Shown one piece after another: positions 1-62,357 of a stretch of 64,000 nt of DNA. The DNA is from Haliotis rubra (lineage: Eukaryota). Below the pieces are notes generated by a model. That model was not told where the DNA came from. It ran no database searches and saw nothing but the letters and a program-made list of their open reading frames with translations. The position numbers and the translations under genes were made by a program. Location: assembly GCF_003918875.1 (NCBI RefSeq), contig NW_025767587.1, positions 186,001 through 250,000 of the forward strand, written 5' to 3'. Each line of letters opens with the position of its first letter. The first letter of the stretch is position 1.

Positions 1-2370
1 TTCATCGCCTCGTTTCTCGTCACCGTATCCATCGCCTCCTTTCTCGTCACCGTATCCATCGCCTCCTTTCTCGTCACCGTATCCATCGCCTCCTTTCTCG
101 TCATCGTATTCATCGCCTTCTTTCTCATCATCGTAATCATCACTTCCTTTCTCGTCACCGTATTCATCGCCTTTCTCGTCACCGTCATCATCGCCTTCCT
201 TCTCATCACCGTATTCATCGCCTCCTTTCTCGTCATTGTATTCATTGCCTCCTTTCTCGTCATTGTATTCATCGTCTTCTTTCTCGTCACCGTAATTATC
301 GTTGCGTTCATCATCGTCGTAATCATCGAGTTTTTCCTCATCACCGTATTCATCGTCTTCCTCATGACCGTAGTCATCGTCTCTAAAATCCTCATCGTAA
401 TCGCCATCGTATTCATCGTCATCTTCCTCATCGTCGTAATCGTCGAACATTTTATCATCATCGTAATCATCGTCATCTTCATCGCCATCATAATAGTCGC
501 TTTCTTCATCGTAACTATAGTCATCGCTTCCTTCCTTGTCACCGTATTCATCACCTCCTACATCACCATGGCCACGTTCCTCCTCGTCGTCTGCGTCGGC
601 TCCTTCAGAAGCACCGTTTGCGTCTCCCTCATCGGCACCATCAGCATCGGCACTTCTCTTTCTCCTGACATGCCTCTTCTCCCCGTGTGCCATCTTCCTC
701 TGAGAATTAAGGTCTGTGTCCATGTCATCCTCTTCTCCGAAGCTGTTTATCCCTATTCTTCTCCCAGCACCAATGCTCTCCTCATCATCCAGAACGTCAC
801 GTGGGTAGGGGGCCTTTTTAAGATGCCGTTGCTTGTTCCTCCCTGGTCGTTTTCTGACGTGGCCCCTGGGGCGTTTGATCTGCATCTCATCAGGGCGTGG
901 CGGTGGGGTGGGAGAGGCACAGGTCTCCTGTCTGGTGGTCTTTTCTGGACACTCCTCGCCTCCTGTGGAGAGTGTCAGATGTACGGTGCGCGTCCCCGTC
1001 GTCTCATCACAGGCTCCCCAGGGTCCCTCTTTGTACTGGCAGTGTTCTCCTACAACAGACACAGGTTCACAGTGATACTTCCGTAACCTCGTGGGGCGAT
1101 GGGTTACCCCTGTGGTCAAAGTGTTCGCTCGTCACGCCGAAGACCCGGGTTCGATTCCCTAAATGGGTACAATGTGTGAATCCCATTTCTGGTATCCCCC
1201 GCCGTGATATTGCTGGAATATCGGCGTAAAACTGAACAAGCGACTTATAACTGAACCAACAGCGCAGATCGATGCTCATGAAGCTGATCACAGGATTGTC
1301 TGGTCCGGACTCGATTATTTACAGACCGCCGCCATTAAAGGTGGAATGTTTCTAATTGTGGCGTAAAACTAAACTCACTCATTCACACGTAACATGATAT
1401 CAAAATATTTCTATCCCACATTTCCCCGATGGGATAAAACAAATACTATTACACAGAAAAGACCCAGGTCAGCTTGATCTTATTATCTTATTTTGTTTTA
1501 AATTTCCGTAGCCAAGCGACTCCATTTACATTTTAAATATTGATATATTTTTCCACTTGACCTAAATTGTAAAATTTCATAAAAATTAGTTACACTTTAC
1601 GTGAATTTCATTCTTTCTGTTATTTTTCATTCAATTTATACTTTTTCGCTTGTCCGATCTCTTGCTAAATAAGGCTTGAGTTGAGAAACAAAAATCACGG
1701 ATTGTCTAACTCGCTTTTCCCATTTTATACTGGATAACACTATCGTTCCACATGCAATACATTTTCCAGGATCAAATACTCAGTAACACAAATCTACACA
1801 GAGGATTATTTTGAGGCTATCTGTTCATCTGGCCTTACGACGTCAAAGATTATTGTTAAAAAATACCCGACTGAAAATTTCAATCTTTTCTGATCACGTG
1901 ATATGCATGACCATTATGTTTGTCAAGAAAGTTCAAATGTATTTTTCATACATAGTATTTGTTTTGTATCTTTCGCCATGGCGATGGTGAATAGTAAATA
2001 TCCCTAGCATTAATATCTATGTATTAAACACGACTGAAACATGTTAATACTTACGATAAAAGTACGCTTTGCAATAAAAGGGCCAGAAAGAGTAAGTTTA
2101 TTTCAATAAAGTTGTGTGGAAGTTGAATGGAATTACGTAAATTCTTCGACTTATCCGTAGTTCGATACATGACTAAAAGGAATACGTAGGGACCAGTTTC
2201 TACTTCGAGACAAATGTAAGTTCGACTCATCTATGTTCGACACAACAGTGTTTCGGTGTATAACAACAGCATAAACAACAATGACAGGGTTTACCTGGTG
2301 TCATAGGCTTCTGCTCGGTGGTGATCACAAAGAATACCAAGATGGCGGAACATACCGATAATCCGCCCAT
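1..2370 (-). CDS. Secreted protein: pleiotrophin/midkine-like Cys4 domain, basic linker, furin site, Asp/Glu/Gly/Tyr-rich repeat tail (3' end outside window)
   Basis: Exon 2370-2295 reads MGGLSVCSAILVFFVITTEQKPMTP+G, then a GTAAAC donor (phase 1). Exon 1049-<1 follows a TGTAG acceptor and reads GEHCQYKEGPWGACDETTGTRTVHLTLSTGGEECPEKTTRQETC...HVRRKRSADADG...(GYGDEKGGD)n, open to the window edge. Probable non-coding exon ends at 4484 (GTAAGT). Confidence 0.85.
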
Positions 2371-7500: not shown

Positions 7501-10500
7501 TTAGCCTCTTCTCCCACCTCTTCTTCCCAGACCACCTTCTCCATCACGATGGGTAAACTCCACGCTTTCACCTCTCACACCACCTTTACTATCGTGTGTC
7601 CCTCGTCCTCCGACTCTTCCATCGTGTCTTCCTCTACTATTTATCATGTCCATTTCTTCTCCACCATTGCCTTTATCAAAATTCTTATCGTCATCAGTAT
7701 CCATGACTCTTCCCCTCCCCCTTCTTCCTCCACCGCCAAACTTCACGTTATTCTCATAACTATTTTCATCAACCATGTCTGCTCCATCCCCTTCTGCTAC
7801 GCTTCTCCCTCCGGCGTGTCGTCCTTCACCTTGCTCCCCCTTTCTTCCTCCATTGCCATAATCTACATAACCTTCATAATCGCCTCCATTATCCACGCTT
7901 CCTTCATTTCTTCTGCTACTTTCTCCATCTATTCCTCTTCCACCTCTTCCCCCAAAAAGGCGTCTTCTTGCGTGCTTCCTTTGCCCATTTTTCCGGCCGG
8001 CGTGACTCATGTCACCTTCAACATCGTTTCCTGTACCTCCCCAACCGTGCGCCCTCCGATTCTGGCCATGTGTTCCTCTACCTCGTCCTCCGTGCATCCC
8101 GTGGTGCCGCCTGGAACCGCGTTTTGATTGATGTTTGTGACGTGCACGTCCTTGTACTCCATGATCTGCGAATCTACCTTCTGCAGCTGCTCCTGCACCT
8201 TCTCCAACTTTCCCTGCGATACCGTGGACCGCGTCTCCATTTCCTTGCAAACTACCCAAGACATCACCGACACCTTGATGACTTCCTGAGACACCGTTGT
8301 CTGTCTCTTCAGATCCTTGTTTATTCCTTGAGTCTCCCCCGACAGCATCACCACCTTGAACACCTCCGTCTATTCCTCGTCCACCTCTTCCCCCAAAATG
8401 GCGTCTTCTAACGTGCTTCCTTTGCCCAGTTACTCGGCCGGAGTGACCCATGCCACCTCTACCTCGTCCTCCGTGCATCCTGCGGTGCCTTCTGGAACCA
8501 CGTATTGATTGATGTTTGCCACGTGCACGTCCTTGGCCTCCATGACCTGTGAATCTACCTTCTGCAGATGCTCCTACACCTCTTCCCTCTCTCCCTTCGA
8601 TATCATCGACAGCGCCTCCATTTCCTTGAAAACTACCCGAGACTACACCGACACCTTGATGACTTCCTGAGACACCGCCGTCTGTCTCTTCAGATCCTTG
8701 TCTATTCCTTGTACCTCCCCCGACAGCATCTCCACCTTGAACACTTTCTCCATCTATACCACCTCCACCTCTTCCCCCAAAATGGCGTCTTCTACCGTGC
8801 TTCCATTGTCCAGTCACTCTGCCAGCATGACCCATATTGCCTTCAAAATCTCTCATTGTACCAGCATCTCCACCTTGAACACTTTCTCCATCTATTCCTC
8901 TTCCCCCAAAATGGCGTCTTCTTGCGTGCATCCTTTTCCCAGTTACTCGGCTGGCGTGACCCATGCCACCTTCAACATCTTCCCCTGTACCTCCCCAACC
9001 GTGTGTCCTCCGATTCTGGTCATGTGCTCCTCTACCTCGTCCTCCGTGCATCCTGTGGTGCCATCTGGAACCACGTATTGATTGATGCTTGTCATGTCCA
9101 CCTCCTTGACCTCCATGACCTGTGAATCTACCTTCTGCAGCTGCTCCTCCACCTTCTCCAACATTCCCTGCGATACCGTCGACAGCACCTCCATTTCCTT
9201 GAAAACTACCCGAGACATCATCGACACCTTGATGACTTCCTGAGACTCCGCCGTCTGTCTCTGCATATCCTTGTTCATTCCTTGAGAGTCCTCCGACAGC
9301 ATTTCCACCTTCATACCTCCTTGAGTCACCTCCGTCTGTCTCTGCATATCCTTGTTTATTCCTTGAGAGCCCCCCGACAGCATCTCCACCTTCATACCTC
9401 CTTGAGTCACCTCCGTCTGTCTCTGCATATCCTTGTTTATTCCTTGAGAGCCCCCCGACAGCATCTCCACCTTCATACCTCCTTGAGTCACCTCCGTCTG
9501 TCTCTGCATATCCTTGTTTATTCCTTGAGAGCCCTCCGACAGCATCTCCACCTTCATACCTCCTTGAGTCACCTCCGTCTGTCTCTGCATATCCTTGTTT
9601 ATTCCTTGAGAGCCCTCCGACAGCATCTCCACCTTCATACCTCCTTGAGTCACCTCCGTCTGTCTCTGCATATCCTTGTTTATTCCTTGAGAGCCCTCCG
9701 ACAGCATATCCACCTTCATGCCTCCTTGAGTCACCTCCGTCTGTCTCTGCATATCCTTGTATATTCCTTGAGAGCCCTCCGACAGCATCTCCACCTTCAT
9801 ACCTCCTTGAGTCACCTCCGTCTGTCTCTGCATATCCTTGTTTATTCCTTGAGAGCCCTCCGACAGCATCTCCACCTTCATACCTCCTTGAGTCACCTCC
9901 GTCTGTCTCTGCATATCCTTGTTTATTCCTTGAGAGCCCTCCGACAGCATCTCCACCTTCATGCCTCCTTGAGTCACCTCCGTCTGTCTCTGCATATCTT
10001 TGTTTATTCCTTGAAACTCCTCCGACAGCATCTCCACCTTGAATATTTTCTTGATTAGTCCTGAAGAGATCACCTTCAGTCACTCCATTTCCTTGAATAC
10101 TCCCTGAGACATCACCGGCAGTCCCATCTCCACCTTGTCTTTTCCTTGGGACATCTCCGCCACCCTTGACATTCTCTCCTTGATCCTGCTCCATTCCTTT
10201 ACCAGAAACAGTGTGTTTTCTTGCATGAGTGTGGCTTGTAAGGATACCTCCAAGCTTGGACTTGGTGCCCTTGAAGAAACTGGGTCTACGTGGAGGTGGA
10301 TTTGGGACCGCTCTGGAGTTGGAGTTTGTTGTTTCGATGATATCCACGCCTGTAGCTGAAGATTAAAAAAAACAAATATCACCATCATCCTCTTATACTA
10401 CTGTGGTGGAGAGGTGGCCTAGTGGTTAAAGCGTTCGCTCGTAATGCCGAATACCCTCGTTCGATTCTCCACATGGGTACAATGTGCAAAGCCTATGTCT

Positions 10501-11891
10501 GGTATTCCCCGCCGTGATGTTGCCTATTTCTGGTGGCCCTGCAATAACGTTGCTGGAATATTGCTAAAGTCGTGGTTTTACCAAACTCACTCTTATACCA
10601 TAGGTATCAATTATTTTCTGAAGACAATACATGAGTACCAGCTTAACGAATGAGAGTAAGTTTAGTTTTACGCCGCACTCAGCAATATTCCAGCTATATG
10701 GCGGCGGTCTGTCAAACAATCCTGTCATCAACAGCATGAGCATCGATCTACGGAATTGGGAACAGATGACATGTGTAAGCCAAGTCAGCGAGCCTGACCA
10801 CCGATCCCGTTAGTCGCCTCTTACGACAAGCATGGGTTACTGAATTCTAACCCGGATCTTCACGGGTACCAGCTTAACCTTAGTGCTGTTTCATATTTGG
10901 AAATCTTGATAAATGCCCACCACAAATGGCCATAAATCGATACTTCCTGTTTCATGCTATACATTATGCCAATATTCTGACTAAAACTGACCATCAATGA
11001 TGCAAATCCAAGTTATGACTTGGGCCATATCTTCTCGTGTTTGAGAACACTTGACTTGCCTTTTCATGTGTTTGTGACGCGTGCCACGGGTTGCTAACGC
11101 ATGGCCATAGTATCACCGTCCATTATTTGACAACCATGCATTACTACATGCTTATGACACAGTTAGCAGAAAAGTCTGATCATTCAGGAAAGTGTCCACA
11201 TTGGTAACTTTCATTCAGTTCAGTGAGTGAGTGAGTGAGTGAGTGAGTTTTGTTTTACGCCGCTTTTTAGCAATATTCCAGCAACATCACGGCGGGGGGA
11301 CACCAGGAATGGGCTTCACACATTGTACCCATGTGGGTAATCGAACCCGGATCTTCGACGTGACGAGCGAACGCTTTAACCACTAGGCTATCCCACCGCC
11401 CCTTATTCAGTACAGATACATAGAGGTAGATATACGTCCGGGATTATACGTATAGTTGTGGATATATTTATAAAACTGTGTACAAAGGCCTTCACAAGGA
11501 ATTTCTATCCCCACAAGCATTTCTGATCTCTAACTTATTTTGCTCAGTATATTACTAGGGCGTCGAACTACACTGTGCCTATAAAGTGTACGGGGGGCGG
11601 TGGGGTAGCCTAGTGGTTAAAGCGTTGGCCCGTCACCCCGAAGACCCGGGTTCGATTCCCCACATGGGCACAATGTGTGAAGTCCATTTCTGGTGTCCCC
11701 CGCCGTGATATTGCTGGAATATTGCTAAAAGCGGCGTAAAACTCAGTCAGTATAAAGTGTTCGAGTAATATTCGACGCCTACAGTAAAGCATGGTTTTAA
11801 CCGATTGGTATTAAAATAGCTACTTACTTTCCTGCAGAGATACGATGACTAGTGCAGTCAGCATGCCCAGGGCACGACAAGGACTGGACAT
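7501..11891 (-). CDS. Secreted ~972-aa Gly/Arg/Asp/His-rich repetitive low-complexity protein
   Basis: Exon 11891-11828 reads MSSPCRALGMLTALVIVSLQE+A, then GTAAGT. It splices in frame (phase 1) to the TTCAG acceptor at 10355 and on into the 948-codon ORF ending 7501. About ten 27-aa repeats are followed by larger RGG/His-rich repeats. Probable non-coding exon ~13550-13494 (GTACGT donor). Confidence 0.85.
9245..10040 (-). repeat. Coding tandem repeat, 81-bp unit x ~10 (YEGGDAVGGLSRNKQGYAETDGGDSRR)
   Basis: Directly visible 81-bp periodicity with near-identical units. Confidence 0.95.
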
Positions 11892-14650: not shown

Positions 14651-15060
14651 ATACTAACGGCCAAAAGAAACTTTACAAATATAAAAATGAGATAATTGGA
14701 ATGAAAAGTAGTTTGTAGGCCCGCAAGCGAATGAAAGCACTCATCGCTAGAATACAGCAACCCTTGATACAACACGTGAAGCGCATGTTTTGCATGTAAA
14801 CGTGTGAAAATGCGAAAAGATCAAAATCACGTGACTCGTTCCGTATGAAAACTGCACGTGCATGGTGGGTATAAAAAGGGGTTTGAATGCTTGCCTTTCA
14901 TTCACTGCAATGGAAAAACGCAAAGAAATGCCAAGCCTTACGGCTGCAGAGCGAGAACGAGCCATCGGAATGGTCCAGATCGGGGTCACCCACGCCCACA
15001 TTGCAAGAATCTTCGGTTGCTCACGCGTTGCTGTAACCAACTTACAGCAATGTTCCAACA
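14651..15060 (+). mobile_element. Tc1/mariner 5' fragment
   Basis: TIR-like TATACTAACGGCCAAAAGAAACTTT; MPSLTAAERERAIGMVQIG from 14928, then truncated. Confidence 0.7.
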
Positions 15061-15114
15061 CTATCACGGCGGTGGACACCCATCATCGGCGGAAAACATT
15101 ACTCACTGGTTGTA

Positions 15115-16179: not shown

Positions 16180-19100
16180 ATGAAGGTCCTCATAGCTCTT
16201 GGACTTGTCGCCTTTGTATATGTAAGTCCACTAGAAGGTATATCTAGTCACCTTTGCATGTGTAAGTCCATCAGAAAGTATATCTAGTCGACTTTGCTTA
16301 TATGAGTCCTTCAGAATGTAGTTCTAGTGAAGATGGCTTGTGTAAGTCCATCAGAAAGTATATATTGTCGACTTTGCTTATATGAGCCCATCAGGATTTA
16401 AGTCTAGTGGAGATGGCTTGTGTAAGTCCAACAGAATGTATATCTAGTTGACTTTGCTGGTGTGAATCCATCAGAATGTAATTCTTGAGGAAATGGCATG
16501 TGTAAGTCCATCGGGAAGAATATCTAGTCGAATTTTCTTATAAAAATCCATCAGAATGTAACTCTAGTGGAGATGGCTTGTGTAAGCCCATCAACCTGTA
16601 TATCTAGTCGACATGGCATATTTAAGTTCATGATATGATTGAAAGCACTTCTCAAAATTCTTTATATATGAATGAATAGTGCTTTTTAACGGTTTTGCGT
16701 CATCCTGTTAAACCACTGCGACGTTCATAATTAAGTAAAGTATACAATGAACCCAAGAAGCATGAAATATGCAAATATAGGTGAATCTTTGTGTTTGACA
16801 CACTTTCTGCTATAGATCAAGGGCCAGTGGCCATTAGCGTTGGGTTCTAATCCCCAATAATGTTAATTGGTTATTCAGTACTATATATACTCTTTAAAAA
16901 AGTAGGAAAAATTCTTTTTTTAATTTACAATTGAAAATATTGAGAGATATATCGGAGTAAATCAATGTTGATATGATAATAATGAATGTTGCGAGAGTGC
17001 ATCACCACTTGCACTTCCTTATGACCATAGTTGTTTGTACAGTAATCGCTCTTAAAAGATGATTGGTGTATGACGTGAAATTTGCATGTGTACGAGTTTC
17101 ATTCTCAAACCAAAAACCGGGCTAGAAACAAACACAAACAACTGTGTGATGCAAGAGGATTGTCAAAATTAATGGTCTACAGTGATTTTTCGATTTTCTT
17201 GAAAACCGTCAAAATCAAGATGACCCCCAACCCCCACCCTTTCCAAGCACGTGTGTGTGTCTACTGCGTTGTGCTCGTGCATCCAATGCATTGTGTTAGG
17301 GAAGGTGATACAGAGAAATGGTGGTGCGTTCATAAGATGTCTGTCCTTTACATTTTTGTTAACGCTTATACTTCCTATCCAAATTGAAAGTTCAGGTTCA
17401 CTTAGTTTTTTTGAAGAGTATACTAGTGGGTCTTGCATTACCCCCTGCTATCTTGCCATCTTCATTTTCCTGTGATGTTGCTAACTGCAGCGTTGACATA
17501 TCCCATAAACGTCAAAGACCTTTATTACTTCGTACGTTCACATGAAACCGGCACCAGGAGATGTAAATGAACTGTCATCCACCGATTGATGTATGAAACT
17601 ACTGACTGTTTCTGTTGAAATAATCTGGTTATATGCATGTACCCTCGATATATACGACTAACGGATAGGGTGGTCAGGCTCGCTCACTTAGCCAACGCAT
17701 GTCATCGTGTCCCAACTGTCGATGCTCATGATGTCGATCCCTGGGTGTCAACAAACGAGCGTCATATAGCGGCAATACATTCGTGACCCACTCGTGTTAT
17801 TCCGGGACAAGCCGAATAGAGGTTACGAAAGGGGCGAGTGGTGACGAATGAGCTGCAATATTGCTGAGTGCGGCGTTAGACAAACAAATTATTTAATCCA
17901 ATATGTTTAGGACATGTAGTGGACTGAATATTGAACGAGTGGCCTAGGGGTGTGGCATGTTAGTCTTGCAAGGATACTCGCTTTATGGTTCGACTCCCGG
18001 GTTGGTAGATTCAGACTGCCGCAGTTGTGAGGGTATCGGTATCCCAGTACCTCAGGTACTCAGTATCCGGTATCTCTGGTACATAATTACAAGCGCCGAA
18101 TGTACACACTTTCCGACTTGGCTGATATCCCAATAAATCGTTTTGCGGAGCTGCGTCTCTTTGTAGGTAAGAAACCTCTGATACTGGGTTAACAACCCTG
18201 ATTTCATGGATTATACTTCTGGGATTGTCAGCATCATACCCGTGACCACTTTCTGCATCACTTCCGTCTTTCATCCTTCATTAAACGGACACGCCGTTGC
18301 GGCGTAAAACACAACACACTCACTTCATTTTGCGCCAGGATCCGCGGATAGATTGTAGCATCATACCCCTGATGGTGGAATTTACCTGAGTCTATACACT
18401 GCATGTCATCTGCTGTGTATGTTTCAGGGTCAGTTCCCCAATTTTGGAGACATCTTTAACTTTGGAACCCGAGATAGCATCCACGGGTATTCCTTCGAAT
18501 ACCACCGGAATGACGTAAGTATGATCTGGCAATTAGATTATGGAAGTGTTACTGAGGTTCCTTAATTATTCGTTCCACTTTCGCTTTAACTCTGCTATAT
18601 ATTTTTTAATATTGAAAGATACGAATCTAAATACTAAGAAGGTTTTTGACTTGTATAAATACTCAAACCCCTTCCATATTCATAACAAACGGTCGAAAGA
18701 AGAGTCTTTGAACGATTCCTATTATGTAATGAACATGTTTTTAGGAATCAGTATCAAATGGTTATTACAGCTTGTGTTCGCGAAACGATTGTGTATCACC
18801 TGCCATACATGTAAGAAAACTTAAAAAAAGCATGTGAATATAATGTTAAAAGTAAAAAAGCATTTTCATGAAATCGAATCAAAAATATGTTTCCAAATTC
18901 TCTGAATTATGCATATATTTGAATGGAAATTATGTGCCTTACAAACACTGTGTCACTGATTCGGCCAGTGGAACAGCTCAAGCTCTGATATCATTCAAAT
19001 GAGACGAGCAATGGAGATGGACAATTATTAGTCATTTTCAAAGCTGTAGGTTCCCCTGATTTCCATTGGCCCACGTTTCTCATCTCGCGTGAATTTACGT

Positions 19101-19960
19101 GAAAGAGCGAGACCTTGGGAAGGCGACCGCACGCATGACAATGGTATTTTATGTGTCAGGAACTGATTCTTGTACGAAACGTCTCTGCCTGCTTCGTCGT
19201 GAACGCTACAAAGGAGATCGAAAGCAAGATGCAACACAGAGACACTAGGGAACAGCTAGAGGTTCGTCAAAACGTTTTCTTTTTATTTCAAATCTTGGCC
19301 TTATTTTATAGGACATTGTACAAATGCGGGTTAGAATTGGTCTTCAGCCAACCATGCTTGTCGTAAGAGGCGACTAACGGAAACGGGTGGTCAGGCTCGC
19401 TGACTTGGTTGACGCATGTCACCATATCCCAGTTGCGTAGATCGATGCTTATGATGCCGATCACTGGATTGTCTGGTCCAGACTCGATATGGCAGAGATC
19501 GCTGTCCTAAAGCTGTAATATTGCTGATTGCGGCGTTGAACATCAAACAAACATAGTCAATGAACGTTAAAGCGTTTGCTCGTCACGCCGAAGACCCGGG
19601 TTCGATTCCCTACATAGGTACAATGTGTGAAGCCCATTTCTGGGGTCCCCCGCCGTAATATTGCTGGAATATTGCTAAAGCGGCTTAAACTCCTGGAATA
19701 TTGCTAAAGCGGCTTAAAACCATCTCACTCACTCACTCTTCTCACCTACCTCACTGAATTTCATATTCAACTTTCATGTGAACATTTGTTTTTGGTTTTT
19801 TTTGTCACACCAGGATGAGTTGTACGCCCAAATAAAAGCACACACCGGTGAGACCGTCAGCAGCATCAGCGACCTCCGCACTAACTACCACGACAACTAC
19901 GCCGTGATTGAGTGCTTCAGACACAGCGTGTACGAACTCCAGTATATTCCCAGCTCTTAG
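16180..19960 (+). CDS. BL1: secreted BRICHOS-like small protein, 125 aa
   Basis: Exons: 16180-16221 MKVLIALGLVAFVY; 18428-18514 GQFPNFGDIFNFGTRDSIHGYSFEYHRND; 19160-19261 ELILVRNVSACFVVNATKEIESKMQHRDTREQLE; 19814-19960 DELYAQIKAHTGETVSSISDLRTNYHDNYAVIECFRHSVYELQYIPSS*. All GT-AG, phase 0. AATAAA at ~19977. Confidence 0.88.
16207..16630. repeat. 40-bp minisatellite starting at the BL1 exon 1 donor
   Basis: Units like TGTAAGTCCATCAGAAAGTATATCTAGTCGACTTTGCTTA, ~10 copies. Confidence 0.9.
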
Positions 19961-32205: not shown

Positions 32206-32356
32206 TTAGGAGCTGGGGGTCAGGTCGTAGACGGAGTGCCTGAAGCACTCGGCGACGGCGCGGATGTCGTGGTATTCGGTGCGGAGCTCGCTGAGGCTGC
32301 TCTTGCTCTCGCCAGTGTGGGCTTTGATCTGCTGGTAGATATCGTCCTGGAAAAAG

Positions 32357-32394
<38 letters not shown>

Positions 32395-36896: not shown

Positions 36897-38206
36897 NNNN
36901 NNNNNNNNNNNNNNNNNNNNNNNNNNNNNNNNNNNNNNNNNNNNNNNNNNNNNNNNNNNNNNNNNNNNNNNNNNNNNNNNNNNNNNNNNNNNNNNNNNNN
37001 NNNNNNNNNNNNNNNNNNNNNNNNNNNNNNNNNNNNCTGCTTCATATTAGCTGCGATAAAGATCGGTTAATGATGTAATAAGAACTCACAATTATGAATT
37101 ACCAAATGGTACACTGCCTTGGAAACCAGCGTAAGTTGATGCAGTAGACATTTGTTTTTGGTGAATAAGACCAGTTATACAGCCAGGTTTTCACTTATTT
37201 CATGGGAAAGTTAGTTCTTCAATGCTGTTGATTGAAACATACTCATATGAAACCTTTCCTTGCTCATACTCCAACTGTACACACTCATTAGATTATATAA
37301 GAAAAGGTTCCAAATATAACATCCATGGACATAAACGTTTTGGAGAGTTTTGTTGTTTTTTCAGGTGTTAACATTATCTTGGCCGTCAAGAGGTTCACAA
37401 AAGGTATATTCATGACATGGTGAACTGAACATAAGGTGTCATCTTGCTAAGCCATCGCTTTCCGCATAAAGCCACTTCGTGTCACTTTAAAGTGACCGCA
37501 CACCTTGCAGTACAGATCTTCAGATTGAGCTATTTGTTGGGAATCTATAAAAGCAGAAATGAGATTCATTGCCAAAATCGTTCACCCAAACAATCAATAT
37601 GGACGACCGATAGAAATCAGCTTTAATGTGTCAACCAACTGGACAAGAAGAAAACCTCTGTGGCACCACTTAGGAGCTGGAGCTGGAGCTGGGGGTCAGG
37701 TCGTAGACGGAGTGCCTGAAGCACTCGGCGACGGAGCGGATGTCGTGGTATTTGGTGCGGAGCTCGCTGAGGCTGCTCTTGCTCTCGCCAGTGTGGGCTT
37801 GGATCTGCTGGTAGATCTGGTNNNNNNNNNNNNNNNNNNNNNNNNNNNNNNNNNNNNNNNNNNNNNNNNNNNNNNNNNNNNNNNNNNNNNNNNNNNNNNN
37901 NNNNNNNNNNNNNNNNNNNNNNNNNNNNNNNNNNNNNNNNNNNNNNNNNNNNNNNNNNNNNNNNNNNNNNNNNNNNNNNNNNNNNNNNNNNNNNNNNNNN
38001 NNNNNNNNNNNNNNNNNNNNNNNNNNNNNNNNNNNNNNNNNNNNNNNNNNNNNNNNNNNNNNNNNNNNNNNNNNNNNNNNNNNNNNNNNNNNNNNNNNNN
38101 NNNNNNNNNNNNNNNNNNNNNNNNNNNNNNNNNNNNNNNNNNNNNNNNNNNNNNNNNNNNNNNNNNNNNNNNNNNNNNNNNNNNNNNNNNNNNNNNNNNN
38201 NNNNNN
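36897..38206. other. Two assembly gaps (36897-37036, 37822-38206)
   Basis: N runs. Confidence 1.
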
Positions 38207-40516
38207 ATCAAAATTATCATCAACTTGACTATCTCGTCAAAAACATTCCTTATTTAGTTATTCTCTGGAAACATAAACTTTCATTTCACCACAACCTTAA
38301 TTCGTCATCTTACAATGATCCTTTCAGAAAGATCTAATCGAAATTGATTAATCACGTGAATCCCGGGTTTGATTCCCAATATGATTACAACATGTGAAGC
38401 CTATTCCTACTTGAGCATTGCTAAAACGGTGTAAAATCTAACCTTCTTACGTTTTGCATTTAATACATACCTCGTATTTTTCCCTGCTGTCCTTGCTATC
38501 CAGGAGCTTCTCGATGTCGTTGTCAACATGTATCAGATAACAGGCGTTAGAACTCCTCACCAGGAGCAGATCCTGACAGAAACAGACCTCTTGGTACAAT
38601 TTCAGAACGTCTTCATCATACCGACTTAACATACAACAAGAAAACACTCAAGCCGGATTAACCCGTGAACATCAGGGTTAGAATTGGTATTCAACAACAC
38701 AAAAGGCTACTAACAGGATCGGGTGGTCAGGCTCGCTGACTTGGTTGACACATGTCATCGTATCCCAATTGCATAGATCGATGATCATGATGTTGATCAC
38801 TGGATTGTGTGGTCCAGACTCGATTATTTACAGACCACCGCCATATAGCTGGACTATTGCTGAGTGCGGCGTTAAGCAAAACACAAAGGCTTAAGCAATC
38901 AAGTCAGGTTCTTTCTTAGCATCCTAAACAGTCAAGACTCAAAAAGCTCGCTCTTATTAACAGAGCCATGGGGGTGGTGGGGTAGCCTAGTGGTTAAAGC
39001 GTTGGCTCGTCACGCCGAAGACCCGGGTTCGATTCCCCACATGGGCACAATGTGTTAAGCCCATTTCTGGTGCCCCCGCCGTGATATTGCTGGAATATTG
39101 CTAAAAGCGGCGTAAAACTAAACTCAGTCAGTCAGTATTAACAGAGCCATGAGTGACAAGGGAGAACAAGGGAGCAATTGAATTCCCAAAAAGTAAACCC
39201 TAAAAATTTCAGCTGCAAATTGTAACATTTGAAAGAAAAACTAGAAGAGACTATCCATGGTCCGTTCAAGTACTACTATACAGTTTTGACCTTTTAGAGG
39301 AATTCCATAAATTTCGTATCTACATTTTTCTTTCTTTGCATCCTTAACAGCCATCCTAAACAGAGCTCGTTCTTAGGAACAGAGCCATGAGTGACACAGA
39401 AGAACAAAAAGGGCAGTTAACTTTCCAAATACGAATCCCTAAAACGTTCAGTTGCCAATAGTAACATTTAAAAGAAACACCAGTTGAAACTATTCATGGT
39501 CCGTTCAAGTACTGCAATACAGTTTTGACCTTTTACAGCAAATTCCATACATTTCGTATCTACATTTTTCAAATTTTTAATCCAGATCTTTGTCATATCC
39601 TTTAAAGCGAAACCTAGAATAAATGTTCCCAGTTTGAAACTACTACCGCTAAGGTCGAGGAAGCTGTTTTCTGATTGATATCGACTTCCTGCCAAAGTTG
39701 GCTAAAGCTCATTCTGACTATGCCCCTGAAGACCCGGGTTAGAATTGGCCTTAAGCAACCCATGCTTGTCAGAGTCGACTTACAGGATCGCTGACTTGGT
39801 TGACACCTGTCATCGTATTCAGAATTAAACAACACCCAAATCATTCTGACTGTAACAGGATGTACAAAAAGCGTTGTGTGGCAGTCGCGAGCACTCACAG
39901 TTTACTTTTCTGAGGTTCACCGGGATGTCTAATGAAATCAACACCCGAATGAGGTATTGTCTCGTACTTACATGGGTCTTGTGGAACTCAAAGCTCCAGC
40001 CATGAATTCTGTCACTGTTCCAGCCAAGGATGTTGTTGATGATGTCCACTGGTTTGAACTGGGCCTGGAAGAGTAAGTGAGTTGGGATTAACCCTCTTCA
40101 TTCATGTCAACTGTTGCCATCACAACTGTTGCCATCACAACTGTTGCCATCACAACTGTTGCCATCACAGCTGTTGCCATCGCAACTGTTGCCATCACAA
40201 CTGTTGCCATCACAACTGTTGCCATCACCAAGTCTATACTGCAACAAAGAATTAAAACAATTTTAAACTCCTCTCCTTTCTACCCCGCCACAAAAAGAAA
40301 AAGAAAAAGGATGTCACATGATCAGCTTATCTCCACTTGAAGTATCCTTGTACAATGTCTCATCTTAAGCGACAGAGCGAGTACTACTTTTTGTCGGCTT
40401 GTCGAAGAGCAATATTTTACTTATAAATTAACAAATGGACACCCAGTTCCTGGTCAATGACGTCACACACTCACAGCAGCAAGGGCGCAGAGCCCCAGGA
40501 TGATATAAACCTGCAT
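37670..40516 (-). CDS. BL4: secreted BRICHOS-like small protein, ~129 aa
   Basis: Exons: 40516-40475 MQVYIILGLCALAA; 40064-39972 AQFKPVDIINNILGWNSDRIHGWSFEFHKTH; 38572-38471 DLLLVRSSNACYLIHVDNDIEKLLDSKDSREKYE; ~37822-37670 [D]QIYQQIQAHTGESKSSLSELRTKYHDIRSVAECFRHSVYDLTPSSSSSS*. The exon 4 acceptor lies in the N-gap. Confidence 0.82.
38971..39135 (+). mobile_element. SINE family 1 copy in BL4 intron 2
   Basis: Flanked by TSD TATTAACAGAGCCATG; not present in BL3 intron 2. Confidence 0.9.
40108..40228. repeat. 15-bp minisatellite CAACTGTTGCCATCA in BL4 intron 1
   Basis: 8 units; only one unit at the equivalent BL3 position (~34004). Confidence 0.95.
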
Positions 40517-44479: not shown

Positions 44480-47400
44480 ATGAAGGCTCTCCTTGTTTTT
44501 ACTGCCTTGGGATTTGTCCTGGTAAGCTAACAAATTGGCAGTAGTATGATCGATGTAATCGATGTTTATGTCACACCATACACCGTGTGGGACGCCAGGT
44601 GTACTTTGTCCCACAGATGGCAAGATGAATCTGGTTCATTCTTGTCTTCCGTGCGAGCCAGTACACCTGGTCCACCATATTGTGTCTCGGAAGGTCGCCA
44701 AAGCGTTAGTTAGGGTTGTCAAGATTCCGTGAATATTCGAATTTTGTTTGGTCAGCTGGATTAACCCAAACGGAAATTTTGTATATAGAGAACCTCGATA
44801 ATCTGGACTCTATTGCGTAGTGATTAAATTTGTGAATGTATTAAGGGGACCTGTGAATATCCGGGCCAGAACTGGTTTTCAGAAACCCAAGTTGGTCTTA
44901 ACATGCAATTATAGAGCGGATTGGGTGGTCAAGCTTTCTCACGTTGTTGATGCCTGTCCCGCTCGCATAGATCGTGCTCATAATGTCAATCACTGGGTCG
45001 TTTGGTGCAGACGACATTATCTACAGTCCACCATTGGGGAATATGTCTATGCGATTATGTATCATACATTTCAGAGGAATGAGCACACAGAATACAGTAT
45101 ACATGGTATTCAAAGTCTTTTGTCCTCTTCAATAATCTGGAATATCCTAATGGTTAAAGCTTTCGCTCCTTGCGGGAAGACCCGAGCATAATTCCACACA
45201 TGTATATAATGTGTGGAGCCTACGGCTGGTGTCGGGGGGTGGGGTAGCCTAGCTGTTTAAGCGCTCGCTCTTCACCCCGAAGGCCCAGGTTCGATTTCCG
45301 TATGGCGTCAGTGTATCAAGCTAATTTATAGAATTTCCACCGTGATTTTGCAGGAATATTGCTAATAGCGGTATTAAACCATACTCACTCACTCACTCCC
45401 AGACGCCTCCGTGGTGTAGTGGTTAGAGCGTCCGCCCGGAGAGCGGAAGGTCGCGGGTTCGATCCCCGACCGCGTCATGCCAAAAGACGTTAAAATATGG
45501 TACTTGTTGGTCCCTGCCTGGCGCTCGGCATTAATTTGGAACAAAAAGGACTGGTCGGCTCGAAGTCAGTATAATGTGTCTAAGTGGGGTATTCATGCTT
45601 CACTGCATGGTATCTCAGTGGGCTAGCACTATAAAACCCAGCTTCAGTCTGGGTTAGTACAAGCAGCCGCACATACACATACACACGCATGCACGTCGTC
45701 ATATGAGCGAAATATTCTCAAGCACGACGTTAAACCCAATTTCACCTCACCTCCCTCCCACTCACTCACTCACTCTGGTTGCCACGTGCACGTCGTAATA
45801 ATGCTGGACAATTGCCAAAAGAGGCGAAAAATCATACTCAGTCACGAATAAATGGCCGGGAATAGACAATGTCGTCTAAAATGGCGGTTACATCTTTACA
45901 CGAGATATCTCTTGTTTGATGAAAGTTTGTCTCATCGTATAAATATATTCCTGTTCCTATTTCAGGGAGATATCGGACAGATCGTGTACTACCACCCCGA
46001 GCTCGTCCACGGCTACTCAATGGAGTATCACAGCTACGCCGTATTTAGCTTCTCGTATTTCCTACCACGAATAAATAATTACTTGCTGATGTTCAAATGA
46101 AGTGAAACTCAGTACGTCTCAGTTAGACTCAGTTGATCCGGAAAAAAACTTAATGGACATGGAGGCTTATTATATACACGAAATACCCATGATTCTTAAA
46201 TAATATATTTGAACACTCTCACCAGGACCTGTACCGTATCTGGATTGAAAATTGAATTATCACTCAAATCGTGTTGCCTTAAGAAGTATAAGAGATTAAG
46301 TGATATCTCCTTGTTGATGATCCTACGATGAAATTTATAAATGTTTTTTCAGGCGATTGTGACATCATTGTTGACTTCACAATTGTTTTTTTAATAACAA
46401 ATATATAGCAAGGATCGTTGATAAAGGTTTAATACTCCGCGGCTAGAGTTAATGTCAGTAAACACTCACAGAGTTTTTCTAATTTTTCACTTTTTTGTAT
46501 TCATCACCAGCATGGAAAGGCACTGAACACAAATCAGACATTAAATGGCATTGTAATATTTCTGTACAACCAGCTGATTCATATAACAATAATGAATGTA
46601 TATTTCAGGACATCATTGTGGTGAGGAACGCTACTACTTGCTACATCGTCGACGTCACCGCCGCCATCGAGACCGACCTGAGGCACAGCACAACGAGGAG
46701 AACGATAGAGGTGAGGTATAAATTGAAAATAACGACATCGAGCGATAATCATTATATCATTATGATAGATGGACTCGTCCCTCTAAACACTAATGTTACA
46801 AACACATACAGCCTGTCTCAAACAACTGAAAACTCGATTAATGTAACTTTTCTCGACAAACATCCACTTCGAATGTAGATGACTTGAGTTTCTGGGTTCG
46901 AATTCCGGTTCGCCTCAATTTGGATTTTTTGGTCGGTAGGCACAATACTCGTTTTCGTGGCGTTTACCAATATGCTAACCGTCTTATAGCCGCCTTATTT
47001 TGGCTTTCCTTACACATTACGTTGGCACGACGTTAAATAGCTGGAGTAGTGATTCATTCGGCTTTAAACTTACTAAATACAACCTCGTGTTGTAAGCTGA
47101 TGCCTTGCAGAGTTACTTCCCTGATGCTTTGCAGAGATACTTCCCTTAGCTCAGACATTCACACAAAGCGTGGATTCAACCCAGGTCGGAATATGTAATC
47201 TGACAAGCCATCATGATACACGTGGATATACGCCCCGGCCAGTGTTACCTGGAACTTTATTCTCTTCTCACGCACTCCCTCACTCCCTCACTCATTCCAC
47301 TCACTCACTCCGTTCAATGTTTACTTCCTTCCAATCACACACTCACTCACTCCTTCTCTCCACTCACTCACCCACCCACACACTCACTCACTCACCCAAC

Positions 47401-47747
47401 CACTCACTCACCCGACCCCCTACTCAATCACTCACCCGACCCCCTACTCAATCACTCACCCGACCCCCCACTCACTCACCCGACCCCCCACTCACTCACT
47501 CAACACTGTAAAATGCAAAGAAATTGTAAAAAACCCACCCCACCCCCTTTGTATTGGGTAAATACACGGGGTGTTTGAATGTTTCCAGGAGGAAATCTAC
47601 AACCAGATGGTGAGTCACAAGGGGGAAGTGGTGTCCTCCATCGACAAGATCCGCCAGCAGCTTCAGGACATCCGTGCTATAGTCGAGTGTTTCAACCACA
47701 ACGTCTACCAGATCAAGTACATGCACTCAACATCGAAATCAATTTAA
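44480..47747 (+). CDS. BL5: secreted BRICHOS-like small protein, 125 aa
   Basis: Exons: 44480-44521 MKALLVFTALGFVL; 45966-46040 GDIGQIVYYHPELVHGYSMEYHSYA; 46609-46710 DIIVVRNATTCYIVDVTAAIETDLRHSTTRRTIE; 47589-47747 EEIYNQMVSHKGEVVSSIDKIRQQLQDIRAIVECFNHNVYQIKYMHSTSKSI*. AATAAA overlaps the stop codon. Confidence 0.87.
45403..45757 (+). mobile_element. tRNA-derived SINE family 3 (Meta/MESC-like core)
   Basis: tRNA head, GTCATRCCAAAAGACGTTAAAATATGGTACTTG core, (CACCT)n tail. Confidence 0.85.
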
Positions 47748-53754: not shown

Positions 53755-55014
53755 ATGAAGTGGTACCTGCTGGCCGTGTGCGTCATCCTCCTTGGACAAG
53801 GAGAAGCTACGCCTGTGGAAGGTAGGTATCCCGGGGTGTTTAATGGTTGGTGGGGTAGCCGACACGGGTAAACGTTTGCCAATCAAGTCGGATTCGACTT
53901 CGTCACTTGGTGCAATGTTTGACGTCATTGTTGTTGTCCGTCACAGTGGTGATGCGTGGTCATGGCGACGTTGAATGTCGGACGTGTTCCAGAACGATGA
54001 TGAACGATGGGTTAGCCTAGCGGTTATAACGTCCGTTCGTCACGCCGAAGACCCGGGTTCGATTCCCCAAATGGGTACAATGTGTGAAGCCCATTTCTGG
54101 TGTCCCCCGCCGTGATGTTGCTGGAATATTGCTAAAAGCGGCGTAAAACAATACTCACTCCAGAACGATGACTAGAGGTTCTGTGAATTCTGCTCTTCAT
54201 AGGGCTGCTTTGAGTGGGCATAATAAGCGTCTGGTTGTCTGGCTCATAAACAGAACATTGCTGGAATTTTTGTCTCGAATATGTCATGCCTCTTGCAAAT
54301 TTCGTGCAATTCGAACAACATCTCGATTGCTTTTCCCAGCAACTCCATCATGCATAAGGGCATGGATTTGGCGCATTTTAAATATGCAAATAATTTATTA
54401 TTATTTTGAATAAATATGGATTTGTCTCCTTTTTTAGGCAGACTATATTTCTCGAAGCAGTTGGTGAATTTTTGTCTCTCTTAAAAGTTCGATACTGAAT
54501 GGTTTGTCTCTCGTGTTCTCTAGACGTGCAGCCCGGGGCTCCTCAAGGTTTGTTCCGGGCAACCAGCGGTGTAGAGTACGTCAAGGATGGGGAAGAGCAG
54601 AACGACGATGCTGGCGGGAATGATGAAGATGGTGATGAAGAAAATGGCGATGATGACGAGAATAACGAAGATGAGGACGAGGAGAATGATGATGGTGGCG
54701 AAGATGATGAGAATAAGGTAGAGTCCAAAGAGGAATCATTCTGGGAAAAGTACAATGTAAGAAGACCCAAAAACTGGAAAAAGATGGGCCATAAGCGAAG
54801 GCATCGTTACAAAAAAGAAATTATGGAAAAGGCAGAGAAGCATGGTAGATCAGAGAACAAAGGCGGTAAGAAGATATCACGGAAGGCAAAGAAGATGATG
54901 GACATTGGGAAAGAACTCATAAAAGGTAGCCATAAATTGAAAGAGGCCGGGCAGGAAATCCGCAGCATGGCGGAAGACGTTGCACGTATTGTTAAACGTT
55001 TTCGCTCAGATTAG
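53755..55014 (+). CDS. Secreted 185-aa protein with acidic D/E/N block and Lys/Arg-rich helical C-terminus
   Basis: Exon 53755-53821 reads MKWYLLAVCVILLGQGEATPVE+G, then GTAGGT (phase 1). Exon 54524-55014 follows a TCTCTAG acceptor and is in frame. AATAAA at 55041. Confidence 0.87.
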
Positions 55015-60288: not shown

Positions 60289-62357
60289 ATGAAGCTGGTG
60301 TTTGCTCTTCTGCTCGTTGGGATTGCTGTGGTAAGATTTCAGTTTTAAAACAGACATATTGATTAAAACATCACAAGCAGAATTTTATCCCTTAGGTAAA
60401 TAAGGATCTGCTTATGTGTATGCGAGGACCAGTTTCGAGCGTTGTATGGTCCTTGGTTTGCGAGAACACTGCGCATGTTCGTGGTTTTACCAAAGCTCTA
60501 AGCGTATAACTGTAAATAATAACGCTTATGTAACGTTAGAGGTCAACTCGCTCACCACTTAAAGAGGTGATGTGCGGTGCTTAAAAAATGGTAATACCGA
60601 ATACTGCTAATGTGGCGCTGAAACATTTTGTGTACATAATAATTTATTATGTTGATGTTTATAGGCTCAGTATCCAAATAACTACCGCCCTGATCGAATC
60701 CACGGCTACACGTTTGATTACCACTCCTATGCTGTAAGTATAATTCAACTTAAAGGTGTTCCACACATTATTGTATTTCATGACTGGTTTCGTGAGTAAG
60801 TTGCTCTTGCGTTTGACTTGAAAACCATATTTTTCTCTGAAACCGTTATACTGCTGCAGGGTTTTATAGCACCGACTTGTTGGTGACTATGAAAATAGAT
60901 CCAACTGACGAGCTTCCTCTTTATACTTCCAGCCTTCTGGTTCTCGATCTTTCTAATAGACCCGTGAAGATCCGGGCTAGAATATTGATCTTCAGTAACC
61001 CATGCTCGTCGTAAGAGGCGACTAACGGGATCGGGTGGTCAGGATCGCTGACTTGGTTGACACATGTCATCAGTTCCCAATTGCGCAGATCGATGCTCAT
61101 GCTGTTGATCTCTGGATTGTCTGGTCCAGACTCGATTATTTAAAGACCGCCGCCATATAGCTGGAATATTGCTGAGTGCGGCGTAAAACTAAACTCACTC
61201 ACTCTTTCTAATATGTCGCTGCATCACTCTGGGACTCTTTTCTGATAAGGCTTACAACAGTTCTTACTCTAACATCCACCATGTCTTAAAGACAACCCTC
61301 TTTGAACGTTACAAGTGACTATTCAGTCCACTATTTCCCTTTGTTTGCAAACAAGTCACATGTGCCATATATTGATCTCATGTATGTGTCTTGGGCATAT
61401 CTGTTTTGGGGTAGCCCAGTGGTTAAAGAGTTCGCTTGTCTCAACAAAGACCCGGGTTCGATTCCCCTCGTGAATACAAGATTGATATGACTGGTGTCCC
61501 CTGCCATAATATTGCTGGAATATTGATACAAGCGGCGTAAAACAGTTATCAACGAAAGGTATTCCAAGATCAGGGTGACGTTGAATAAGAATATGGAAAT
61601 GCTAAAAAATATGGTAACATGTCCCGTTAATGATGGAGAATGTACGGCGCTATATATTGCTCATGTTTGTTCAGAAAATTGCAACAAAACAAATCGCACA
61701 TACTCGGCTATAAGGAAGTATGAGGCCTTTGGTAAACATCTTCACGAACTAAGTCAATATAGGGGACATAATCTTGAATATCTTTTACACGAACCATGGC
61801 AGGGTTGTCCAAAAACAGGCGAAAATATGGTACATTGATGTTGCCCTTCCTGGCACGTCATTAATGTTATAGTCGGAGCCAGGGTACATGATCTGGTCTC
61901 AGGATCAATGGTAACCTGTGGCATGCTGCCTCAGTACACCTTAGCCTAGTGGTTAAAGCATTGGCTCGTCACGCCGAGTACCAGGGTTCGATTCCCCAAC
62001 ATGGGTGCAATGTGTGAAGCCCATTACTGGTATCCCCAGCCGTGATATTGCTGGAATATTGCTGGGATATTGCTGGAATATTGCTAAAAGTGGCGTAAGA
62101 CCATACTCACTCACTCAGTTGGCGAGCACTGTAAAACCGACAACAGTTGAACACAAACTGACGCAGACACACACACCGACAGAACAGACTAATACAAAAC
62201 TATAAAATCACACAGGGACACTGGCGCGCAGACACTTATCGCGTTGATTTACTTTCAGGATTTGCTGGTGGTCACCAACACCAGCACCTGCGTTCTGGTG
62301 TCCCTCCCTGGGAAGGATGACGAAATGAGGGACCTCCAAGAACGCTACAAGATTGAA
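60289..62357 (+). CDS. BL6: secreted BRICHOS-like small protein (exons 1-3; exon 4 beyond window)
   Basis: TATAAAA at 60232. Exons: 60289-60330 MKLVFALLLVGIAV; 60665-60733 AQYPNNYRPDRIHGYTFDYHSYA; 62259-62357 DLLVVTNTSTCVLVSLPGKDDEMRDLQERYKIE. All GT-AG, phase 0. Confidence 0.83.
60959..61202 (+). mobile_element. Headless retroposon family 2 (~245 bp), representative copy
   Basis: Starts GACCCGTGAAGATCCGGG; shares the GCTGGAATATTGCT..GCGGCGTAAAAC tail with family 1; TSD TCTTTCTAATA. Other copies: 2771-3020(-), 3101-3356(-), 10652-10866(-), 19326-19552, 24628-24898(-), 31137-31373(-), 38661-38880, 55697-55910. Confidence 0.88.

What the first reader, a model, noticed from the sequence alone, without database searches (positions are those of the whole stretch)
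1..62357. Possible chaperone-plus-client secretory locus: BRICHOS-like genes interleaved with disordered charged proteins
Seen: every host gene found in the 64 kb has a signal peptide. The three non-BL genes encode low-complexity, charge-blocked proteins (acidic DEGY repeats; RGG/His/Gly repeats; an acid-base diblock) and share the layout non-coding exon / signal exon with phase-1 intron / one large exon. One lies between BL5 and BL6. Inference: this is a co-regulated gland locus (mucus, adhesive, shell or egg coat) in which oppositely charged polymers coacervate or fibrillate and the client-less BRICHOS-like proteins act on them in trans.
Basis: inference. Interest (0 to 1): 0.8.

Follow-up and report, generated by a model that had tools for sequence, protein, structure and literature searches.

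The report
Abalone BRICHOS-like cluster with charged neighbours
This stretch of blacklip abalone DNA holds a tandem array of small secreted proteins with a BRICHOS chaperone-like fold, plus three unrelated genes for secreted, highly charged, disordered proteins; the gene models are real, but nothing yet shows that the two kinds work together.

Summary
The window is Haliotis rubra, contig C2697:186001-250000. It carries six four-exon "BL" genes (about 125-aa precursors with a 14-aa signal exon). It also carries three genes built as a signal exon, a phase-1 intron and one large exon: G1, PTN/MK-C domain plus a polyacidic Tyr tail; G2, a 972-aa Gly/Arg/His repeat protein; G3, an acid-base diblock.

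"BRICHOS-like" is supported by fold. A pLDDT 91.8 model has proSP-C BRICHOS (2YAD) as its top hit in three independent structure searches (best Z 6.7), and two Cys are invariant. Pfam PF04089 does not match.

The family is gastropod-wide and already in databases: the "anoxia-induced grl/let-like" proteins of Littorina and H. discus, and two Lottia proteins that UniProt calls BRICHOS domain-containing. The array holds at least 9 BL genes. BL3 is broken by a repeat insertion, and BL6's last exon lies outside the window.

Linkage with G2 and G3 is conserved in other abalones. It is absent in Patella, Gigantopelta and Babylonia. Co-expression, coacervation and chaperoning in trans remain untested. 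The scan also noted the six BL genes separately (s1-352082).

Verdict: a new member of a known kind, moderately interesting.

The parts
1..2370 (-). G1: signal exon 2370-2295 (phase-1 donor) and large exon from 1049 running off the left edge (stop about 144 bases outside). 423-aa precursor: PTN/MK C-type domain, basic linker with an RRKR site, then a polyacidic Asp/Glu/Gly/Tyr repeat.
   Evidence: model; PF01091 PTN_MK_C, 30.1 bits against a cut-off of 25.3; tail net charge -101.
7501..11891 (-). G2: signal exon 11891-11828 (phase 1) and large exon 10355-7501. 972-aa Gly/Arg/His-rich repeat protein: ten 27-aa units, then three units of about 150 aa.
   Evidence: An orthologue of the same composition lies in H. 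cracherodii L001. No Pfam or atlas match.
16180..19960 (+). BL1: four exons, 125 aa, identical to RefSeq LOC124262815.
22109..26223 (-). BL2: four exons, 121 aa.
32206..34530 (-). BL3: exons 2-4 are intact. The signal exon is split by a 185-bp dispersed repeat (34324-34508) with a 12-bp target-site duplication, so it is probably a pseudogene or a null allele.
   Evidence: (at least 40 genomic copies of the insert at 91-95% identity).
37670..40516 (-). BL4: four exons. The acceptor and first base of the last exon are lost in the assembly gap at 37822-38206.
44480..47747 (+). BL5: four exons, 125 aa. Orthologues in H. cracherodii and H. rufescens (83% identity to the H. cracherodii protein).
53755..55014 (+). 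G3: signal exon 53755-53821 (phase 1) and large exon 54524-55014. 185-aa acid-then-base diblock.
   Evidence: The H. rufescens orthologue (205 aa) is annotated in the same position.
60289..62357 (+). BL6: exons 1-3. The last exon lies outside the window, beyond the 64-bp satellite at 62437-63748.
36897..37036 (.). Assembly gap in intergenic DNA between the BL4 3' end and the BL3 upstream region.
37822..38206 (.). Assembly gap inside BL4 intron 3, at the place where BL3 has a (CAT)n microsatellite.

Best explanation
The window is the left two-thirds of a Haliotis tandem array of at least nine genes. They belong to a gastropod-wide family of small secreted proteins: a signal peptide plus about 110 residues, with no client tail. 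The family has a divergent BRICHOS fold. It is the same family as the database entries named anoxia-induced grl-like or let-like protein, and as two Lottia proteins that UniProt names BRICHOS domain-containing.

Inference: by analogy with gastrokines and with isolated BRICHOS domains, the proteins most likely act outside the cell or in the secretory pathway. There they would act as free-standing chaperones that bind exposed aggregation-prone segments, probably as part of a stress response.

Three unrelated genes, so far seen only in Haliotis, sit at one end of the array (G1, G2) or inside it (G3). They encode secreted, disordered, charge-segregated proteins. The neighbourhood has been stable within abalones. 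However, the BL family is older than these neighbours and exists without them in other gastropods. The charged proteins are therefore possible clients, not demonstrated ones.
For: Gene models; BL1 matches RefSeq exactly.

Fold: AlphaFold2 with a 47-sequence alignment gives pLDDT 91.8.
- Foldseek against the PDB puts the six 2YAD BRICHOS chains within the top eight hits (best E 0.11, probability 0.87).
- The Foldseek-independent search ranks 2yad_A first (Z 6.7, rmsd 2.9, 74 of 77 residues aligned) and the BRICHOS trimer 8ox2 third (Z 5.0).
- The first named family in the ESM Atlas shape search is PF04089 (TM 0.52).

Conserved residues: Cys54 in 47 of 47 sequences, Cys111 in 46 of 47, an acidic residue at position 30 in 35 of 47.

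Family: 56 representatives at E <= 0.001. Those whose sources I looked up come from Haliotis, Gigantopelta, Babylonia, Patella, Nucella, Littorina and Lottia, with source names including anoxia-induced grl/let-like and BRICHOS domain-containing. BL1 is 29-31% identical to these, with BLASTP E 1e-15 to 1e-20 against a ten-sequence database.

Array extent.

Synteny within Haliotis.

No such neighbours in three other gastropods.
Against: - The Pfam BRICHOS model matches none of the 47 family members and no BL exon in the genome.
- The structural scores are middling: Z 6.7 is within the range that unrelated folds can reach.
- Which acidic residue corresponds to the BRICHOS Asp was not established.
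- No chaperone activity, no expression site and no anoxia response is shown for any gene of this array.
- The paper behind the grl name was not readable here.
- G2 could not be tied to an annotated protein, and its internal repeats evolve almost neutrally (pN/pS 0.8-0.96).
Confidence: 0.6

Rival explanations
1. This is one co-regulated gland locus: G1, G2 and G3 are oppositely charged polymers that coacervate or fibrillate after secretion, and the client-less BL proteins keep them soluble in trans until release.
For: - All nine genes encode secreted proteins, from four unrelated families.
- The charges are complementary: G1 about -99, the G2 C-terminal half is basic and His-rich, G3 is a diblock.
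- G3-BL and G2-BL linkage is kept in H. rufescens and H. cracherodii.
- Two RNA-like runs of a related species hold low-depth contigs on both G3 and BL6 exon 2, while two other runs hold neither.
Against: - BL relatives in Patella, Gigantopelta and Babylonia have no such neighbours.
- Other BL copies in the same genome (contigs C902 and C2189) lack clear charged partners, apart from one acidic ORF about 5.5 kb away on C2189.
- Relatives are named as anoxia-induced transcripts, not gland products.
- No peptide of these proteins was found in the supplements of the H. laevigata shell proteome paper.
- The read evidence covers four runs, at depths of about 1-5, with the RNA status only guessed.
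Confidence: 0.12
2. The BL proteins are not chaperones. They are secreted signalling or defence factors that merely reuse the BRICHOS scaffold (like gastrokines as mucosal factors). The array expanded under diversifying selection, as immune or stress effectors do.
For: - Tandem expansion with copy-number differences between species: one BL1 in H. rubra, two in H. cracherodii.
- Paralogues are only 35-45% identical, and orthologues across abalones 77-83%.
- One copy has been killed by a transposon.
- A stress-induced name is attached to relatives.
Against: There is no C-terminal peptide to release, no cationic or amphipathic segment typical of antimicrobial peptides, and mature pI is 4.8-6.2. 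No receptor or activity data exist either way.
Confidence: 0.2
3. The neighbourhood has no functional meaning. A repeat-rich, gene-poor region happened to collect fast-evolving lineage-specific secreted genes, and G2 may be a decaying or non-functional repeat ORF.
For: - Dense SINEs, satellites, Tc1/mariner remnants and a Maverick/Polinton-like element surround the genes.
- G2 repeats show pN/pS near 1.
- G2 was not retrieved as an annotated protein, and no gene is listed at its orthologue's place in H. cracherodii.
Against: - Four unrelated families that are all secreted is unlikely by chance (my rough estimate is below 1 in 1000, if about 15% of genes encode secreted proteins).
- G2's 948-codon frame stays open through repeats that are about 13% diverged.
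- Its H. cracherodii orthologue keeps the signal exon (62% identity) and the Gly/Arg/His composition, even though the repeat sequence differs.
Confidence: 0.25

Closest known systems
BRICHOS domain of prosurfactant protein C (PDB 2YAD) and the BRICHOS superfamily (Pfam PF04089)
   Same: Best structural match in three searches. Two conserved Cys lie near the two ends of the aligned core. A hydrophobic N-terminal targeting segment is present. A genuine BRICHOS exon elsewhere in this genome aligns its Cys-Tyr-Val motif with the BL Cys54 motif.
   Different: No Pfam match. The protein is about 110 residues in all, with no linker, no long loop and no C-terminal client region. The position usually held by Asp is not established.
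Gastrokines (vertebrate secreted signal-peptide-plus-BRICHOS proteins; from general knowledge)
   Same: The same minimal layout: a cleavable signal peptide and a free BRICHOS domain secreted without an obvious attached client.
   Different: No sequence similarity was found or tested. Gastrokines are larger, and exist as a few genes per genome rather than a nine-gene array.
BRICHOS-linked antimicrobial peptide precursors of marine worms (arenicin, alvinellacin, nicomicin; review PMC11767717)
   Same: Lophotrochozoan secreted BRICHOS proteins with a signal peptide.
   Different: Those carry a convertase site and a C-terminal peptide. The BL proteins end 8-14 residues after the last strand.
Database entries named anoxia-induced grl-like and let-like proteins (Littorina littorea Q1EHI9 and Q1EHI8; Haliotis discus discus D5FW84)
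   Same: True homologues: 29-31% identity over the full length (E 1e-15 to 1e-20), and the same size, signal peptide and two Cys.
   Different: They are paralogues outside this array. Anoxia induction is known only from the name and from a paper title (Larade and Storey 2008, cited in PMC2699829) that I could not read. With only two Cys, the proteins are not granulins.
Oppositely charged secreted protein sets that coacervate, such as sandcastle-worm cement or mussel foot proteins (from general knowledge)
   Same: G1, G2 and G3 are secreted, disordered and charge-segregated, with Tyr-, Gly- and His-rich repeats.
   Different: No sequence relation, no evidence of gland expression, and no phosphoserine- or Dopa-type motifs were examined. 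This is only an analogy.

Membership tests
BRICHOS domain (PF04089) | Match to the family's sequence profile above its curated cut-off | tested here: not met
   No hit for BL1, for BL exons, for any of the 47 family members, or at the BL cluster in a six-frame genome search. UniProt names two Lottia members BRICHOS domain-containing. That name presumably comes from another profile, which I could not run.
BRICHOS domain (PF04089) | Fold: a central beta-sheet packed by two helices, as in 2YAD | tested here: met
   Model pLDDT 91.8. 2YAD ranks first in Foldseek (E 0.11) and in VIA-align (Z 6.7, 74 of 77 residues, rmsd 2.9). A BRICHOS cluster is the first named family in the atlas search. The scores are moderate.
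BRICHOS domain (PF04089) | Two conserved Cys forming the domain disulfide, and one conserved Asp | tested here: inconclusive
   Cys54 is invariant and Cys111 is present in 46 of 47 sequences. Asp or Glu at position 30 occurs in 35 of 47, and Glu38 in 31 of 47. Neither the disulfide geometry nor which acidic residue is equivalent could be checked.
BRICHOS domain (PF04089) | Proprotein layout: hydrophobic N-terminus, linker, BRICHOS domain, then a C-terminal aggregation-prone client | tested here: not met
   A signal peptide is present, but the proteins end just after the last strand. They are domain-only.
BRICHOS domain (PF04089) | Chaperone activity against fibril formation or aggregation | not testable with these tools
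   Needs recombinant protein assays.
Gastropod anoxia-induced grl/let-like family | Full-length sequence homology to the named Littorina and Haliotis discus proteins | tested here: met
   Profile search E 7.7e-14 to 9.3e-11; BLASTP 29-31% identity; names.
Gastropod anoxia-induced grl/let-like family | Transcript induction by anoxia | not tested
   No suitable runs could be examined.
Pleiotrophin/midkine (for G1) | PTN_MK_C domain above the gathering score | tested here: met
   PF01091, 30.1 bits against a cut-off of 25.3, residues 7-52 of the large exon. No N-terminal PTN/MK domain was found.

The most novel reading that the evidence does not exclude
In abalones, a set of free-standing secreted BRICHOS chaperones has become genomically and transcriptionally coupled to lineage-specific polyacidic, polybasic/His-rich and diblock disordered proteins. 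The BL proteins would hold these in check in trans until secretion. That would be a natural chaperone-plus-client gene neighbourhood for a coacervating or fibrillating biomaterial.
Probability: 0.12. Interest if true: 0.8.

Novelty: new member of a known kind. Interest (0 to 1): 0.45.

Why it matters
BRICHOS domains are studied as anti-amyloid chaperones, almost always as parts of proproteins that carry their own client.

A gastropod-wide family of minimal, client-less, secreted BRICHOS-fold proteins would give a compact natural model of trans-acting BRICHOS function. This family is expanded to at least nine tandem genes in abalone, and its relatives are named for anoxia induction.

The finding also flags dozens of mollusc "uncharacterized proteins" for re-annotation. 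The Pfam model tried here misses this family, so sequence-only annotation may keep missing it.

The three charged neighbours are candidate structural or secretion proteins of abalone. They are worth checking in mucus, digestive-gland and shell proteomes. If they prove to be BL clients, the locus would be a rare case of chaperone-client linkage in an animal genome.

Tried and rejected
- Pfam on single BL exons, on full BL1 and on all 47 relatives: no BRICHOS hit.
- Profile search of PDB sequences: nothing.
- Single-sequence structure prediction of BL1: useless, pLDDT 45.
- hhalign of the family against one genuine abalone BRICHOS exon: only a 12-column match around the first Cys, not significant.
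- The look-up of encoding contigs for BL1: the window's own genome is withheld.
- The search for homologous proteins with G2: flooded by low-complexity words, no hit; this says nothing either way.
- Atlas look-alike search for G2 and G3: no usable hit.
- Literature searches for peptide strings, LOC and XP identifiers and the grl/let names: no paper. Supplements of the H. laevigata shell proteome paper: no match. The Larade and Storey 2008 paper is not held.
- Sequencing runs: no run on record as RNA holds the stretch. I laid reads at 90% likeness, which let SINE copies swamp the tables. Only faint exon signals remained.
- I considered and dropped the poly-Asp ORF at 32220-32465: it is the wrong frame of BL3's last exon plus a (CAT)n microsatellite.
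- I did not run complex prediction, because I do not claim that the BL proteins bind the G proteins, and disordered partners are outside what that test can judge.
Full report
**Identity of the window.** A search with the last exon of one BL gene returned a 125-aa RefSeq protein of Haliotis rubra (LOC124262815). It is identical to my four-exon model. The genome search places the window at contig C2697:186001-250000 of a 1.38-Gb assembly. About 42% G+C, many SINE copies, satellites and transposase remnants fit a mollusc genome.

**The BL genes.**
- A conserved 34-residue exon occurs six times. A conserved last exon occurs five times in the window. A third conserved exon lies upstream of each copy.
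- A scan for short ORFs with a hydrophobic core and a phase-0 donor found a 14-residue signal exon with a strong GTAAG or GTGAG donor for each of five genes. The BL3 counterpart was found by homology.
- All introns are phase 0 with canonical ends. The assembled proteins are 121-128 residues and align along their whole length.
- BL3's signal exon is interrupted after the seventh codon by 185 bp flanked by a 12-bp direct duplication, which brings a stop three codons later. The insert has at least 40 copies at 91-95% identity across the genome. BL3 is therefore a pseudogene or a null allele.
- BL6's last exon is 1.5 kb beyond the window's right end.

**Assembly gaps.**
- The gap at 37822-38206 lies in BL4's intron 3, at the place where BL3 carries a (CAT)n microsatellite. 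It removes the acceptor and the first base of the last exon. The rest of that exon reads in frame and matches BL3.
- The gap at 36897-37036 is intergenic.
- Continuity across either gap cannot be shown, and I did not try to fill them.

**The three other genes.**
- Each has a signal exon ending in a phase-1 donor, and an acceptor that restores the frame of one large exon.
- G1 is 423 aa. It has a PTN/MK C-type domain above Pfam's cut-off, a basic linker with an RRKR site, and a 258-residue tail that is 31% Asp, 17% Glu, 19% Gly and 10% Tyr, with net charge -101.
- G2 is 972 aa, 27% Gly and 12% Arg, with 44 His. It has ten 27-residue units followed by three units of about 150 residues; its C-terminal half has pI 11.
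- G3 is 185 aa, with an acidic block (-28) followed by a basic, probably helical block (+18).
- None of the disordered parts has a Pfam or atlas relative.

**Are the BL proteins BRICHOS-like?**
- By sequence profile, no. Pfam PF04089 matches neither BL1, nor any of 47 relatives, nor the cluster in a six-frame search.
- By structure, yes, at moderate strength. A profile built from BL1, its H. cracherodii orthologue and the window's own exons found 56 representative relatives. With 47 of these as the alignment, AlphaFold2 gives pLDDT 91.8.
- Foldseek against the whole PDB puts the six chains of 2YAD, the proSP-C BRICHOS crystal structure, within its first eight hits (E 0.11, probability 0.87).
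- An independent all-against-all aligner ranks 2yad_A first (Z 6.7, rmsd 2.9, 74 of 77 residues aligned) and a BRICHOS trimer third.
- The first named family in the ESM Atlas shape search is PF04089 (TM 0.52).
- The family keeps two Cys (47 of 47 and 46 of 47) near the two ends of the aligned core, and an acidic residue upstream.
- A genuine BRICHOS exon from another contig of this genome aligns its Cys-Tyr-Val motif with the first BL Cys, though not significantly.
- The proteins stop just after the last strand, so they are domain-only.

**The family is not unknown.**
- Source names attached to relatives include "Anoxia-induced grl-like protein" (Haliotis discus discus; Littorina littorea), "Anoxia-induced let-like protein" (Littorina littorea), and "BRICHOS domain-containing protein" for two Lottia gigantea entries in UniProt.
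- BL1 is 29-31% identical to these over its full length.
- The review PMC2699829 describes screening of a Littorina hepatopancreas cDNA library for anoxia-induced transcripts. [quoted passage not shown] I could not read that paper, so the link between it and the grl entries is my inference.
- With two Cys only, these proteins are not granulins.
- The other relatives whose sources I looked up are unnamed proteins of Gigantopelta, Babylonia, Patella, Nucella and Littorina saxatilis, plus marine metatranscriptome and unnamed metagenome entries.

**Extent and conservation of the locus.**
- The contig carries BL last exons at nine places over about 70 kb. Three further copies lie on two other contigs. 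BL7 is RefSeq LOC124262817.
- The order in H. rubra is: Maverick/Polinton-like element, G1(-), G2(-), BL1(+), BL2(-), BL3(-), BL4(-), BL5(+), G3(+), BL6 to BL9 (+). Only G3 is interleaved.
- In H. rufescens the annotated genes run: 127 aa BL(-), BL5 orthologue, a 205-aa G3 orthologue, BL6 orthologue, then proteins of 130, 145 and 140 aa; the last is the BL9 orthologue.
- H. cracherodii has two tandem BL1-like genes. Upstream of them, on the opposite strand, lie a signal exon 62% identical to G2's and a 427-residue Gly/Arg/His ORF with different repeat units.
- So the neighbourhood is conserved among abalones, and G2's composition is conserved although its sequence is not.
- In Patella caerulea, Gigantopelta aegis and Babylonia areolata the BL relatives stand singly or in pairs next to NAAA, ITIH-like, cobW and CFAP107 genes. 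No charged low-complexity ORF lies within 10 kb.

**Expression.**
- No run on record as RNA holds the G3-BL6 stretch. Ten small contig sets guessed to be RNA hold 5-8% of its words.
- Laid at 90% likeness, they mostly cover SINE copies.
- Two runs of a related species (organism B) have low depth on the G3 exon (5.4 and 4.5) and on the bin with BL6 exon 2 (1.5 and 4.8). Two runs of organism A, the organism whose DNA runs hold most of this stretch, have almost none.
- This is compatible with co-occurrence but far too thin to count as co-expression.

**Judgement.**
- The functional story rests only on adjacency and charge arithmetic. Linkage within Haliotis speaks for it. Against it stand the older origin of the BL family without such neighbours, the presence of other BL copies elsewhere in the genome, and the stress-related naming of relatives.
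- I therefore read the locus as a tandem array of free-standing secreted BRICHOS-fold proteins, most likely trans-acting chaperones of the secretory or extracellular space. Three Haliotis-specific charged proteins are plausible but unproven clients.
- The scan noted the six BL genes separately (s1-352082). It also noted a canonical BRICHOS precursor elsewhere in this genome (s1-344790).

Noticed in passing
window 34324-34508: A 185-bp dispersed repeat is inserted in BL3's signal exon, with a 12-bp target-site duplication. At least 40 copies at 91-95% identity exist genome-wide, so it is a young short mobile element.
   Followed up: yes
L005:5256-9595 (about 10-15 kb left of the window): Large ORFs with weak DNA_pol_B_2 and rve integrase matches, and a Rho_N-like repeat ORF. 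It looks like a Maverick/Polinton-type element bordering G1. Observed only.
   Followed up: partly
window 28718-29404, 50260-50616, 14862-15149: Tc1/mariner-type transposase remnants (HTH_Tnp_Tc3_2 and related HTH domains) between the BL genes.
   Followed up: partly
window 5048-6835 and 62437-63748: Two satellite arrays: 31-32 bp with about 50 copies, and 64 bp with about 20 copies. The second lies inside BL6's last intron.
   Followed up: no
window 32357-32394 and 37822-38206: A (CAT)n microsatellite sits just upstream of BL3's last exon. The assembly gap in BL4 is at the same relative place, which suggests that the repeat caused the gap.
   Followed up: partly
window 7501-10347; L001:427-1707: G2's three long internal repeats differ at pN/pS 0.8-0.96. 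The H. cracherodii orthologue keeps the Gly/Arg/His composition and the signal exon, but has different repeat units. Selection seems to act on composition rather than sequence.
   Followed up: partly
L001:10001-21657: H. cracherodii has two tandem BL1-like genes where H. rubra has one, so copy number in the array changes between species.
   Followed up: partly
window 57350-57749: Contigs of two RNA-like runs of a related species cover this unannotated intergenic stretch (summed contig depth about 20-120). No gene model was found there.
   Followed up: no
G000:C1768:572001-572138 (L023:5001-5138): An exon of a canonical BRICHOS gene (PF04089, 24.5 bits), preceded by what look like partial tandem copies of the same exon.
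   Followed up: no
G000:C2189:4919383-4919868: An acidic Ser/Glu-rich ORF of 162 aa lies about 5.5 kb from an isolated BL copy. It is not known whether it is a gene.
   Followed up: no
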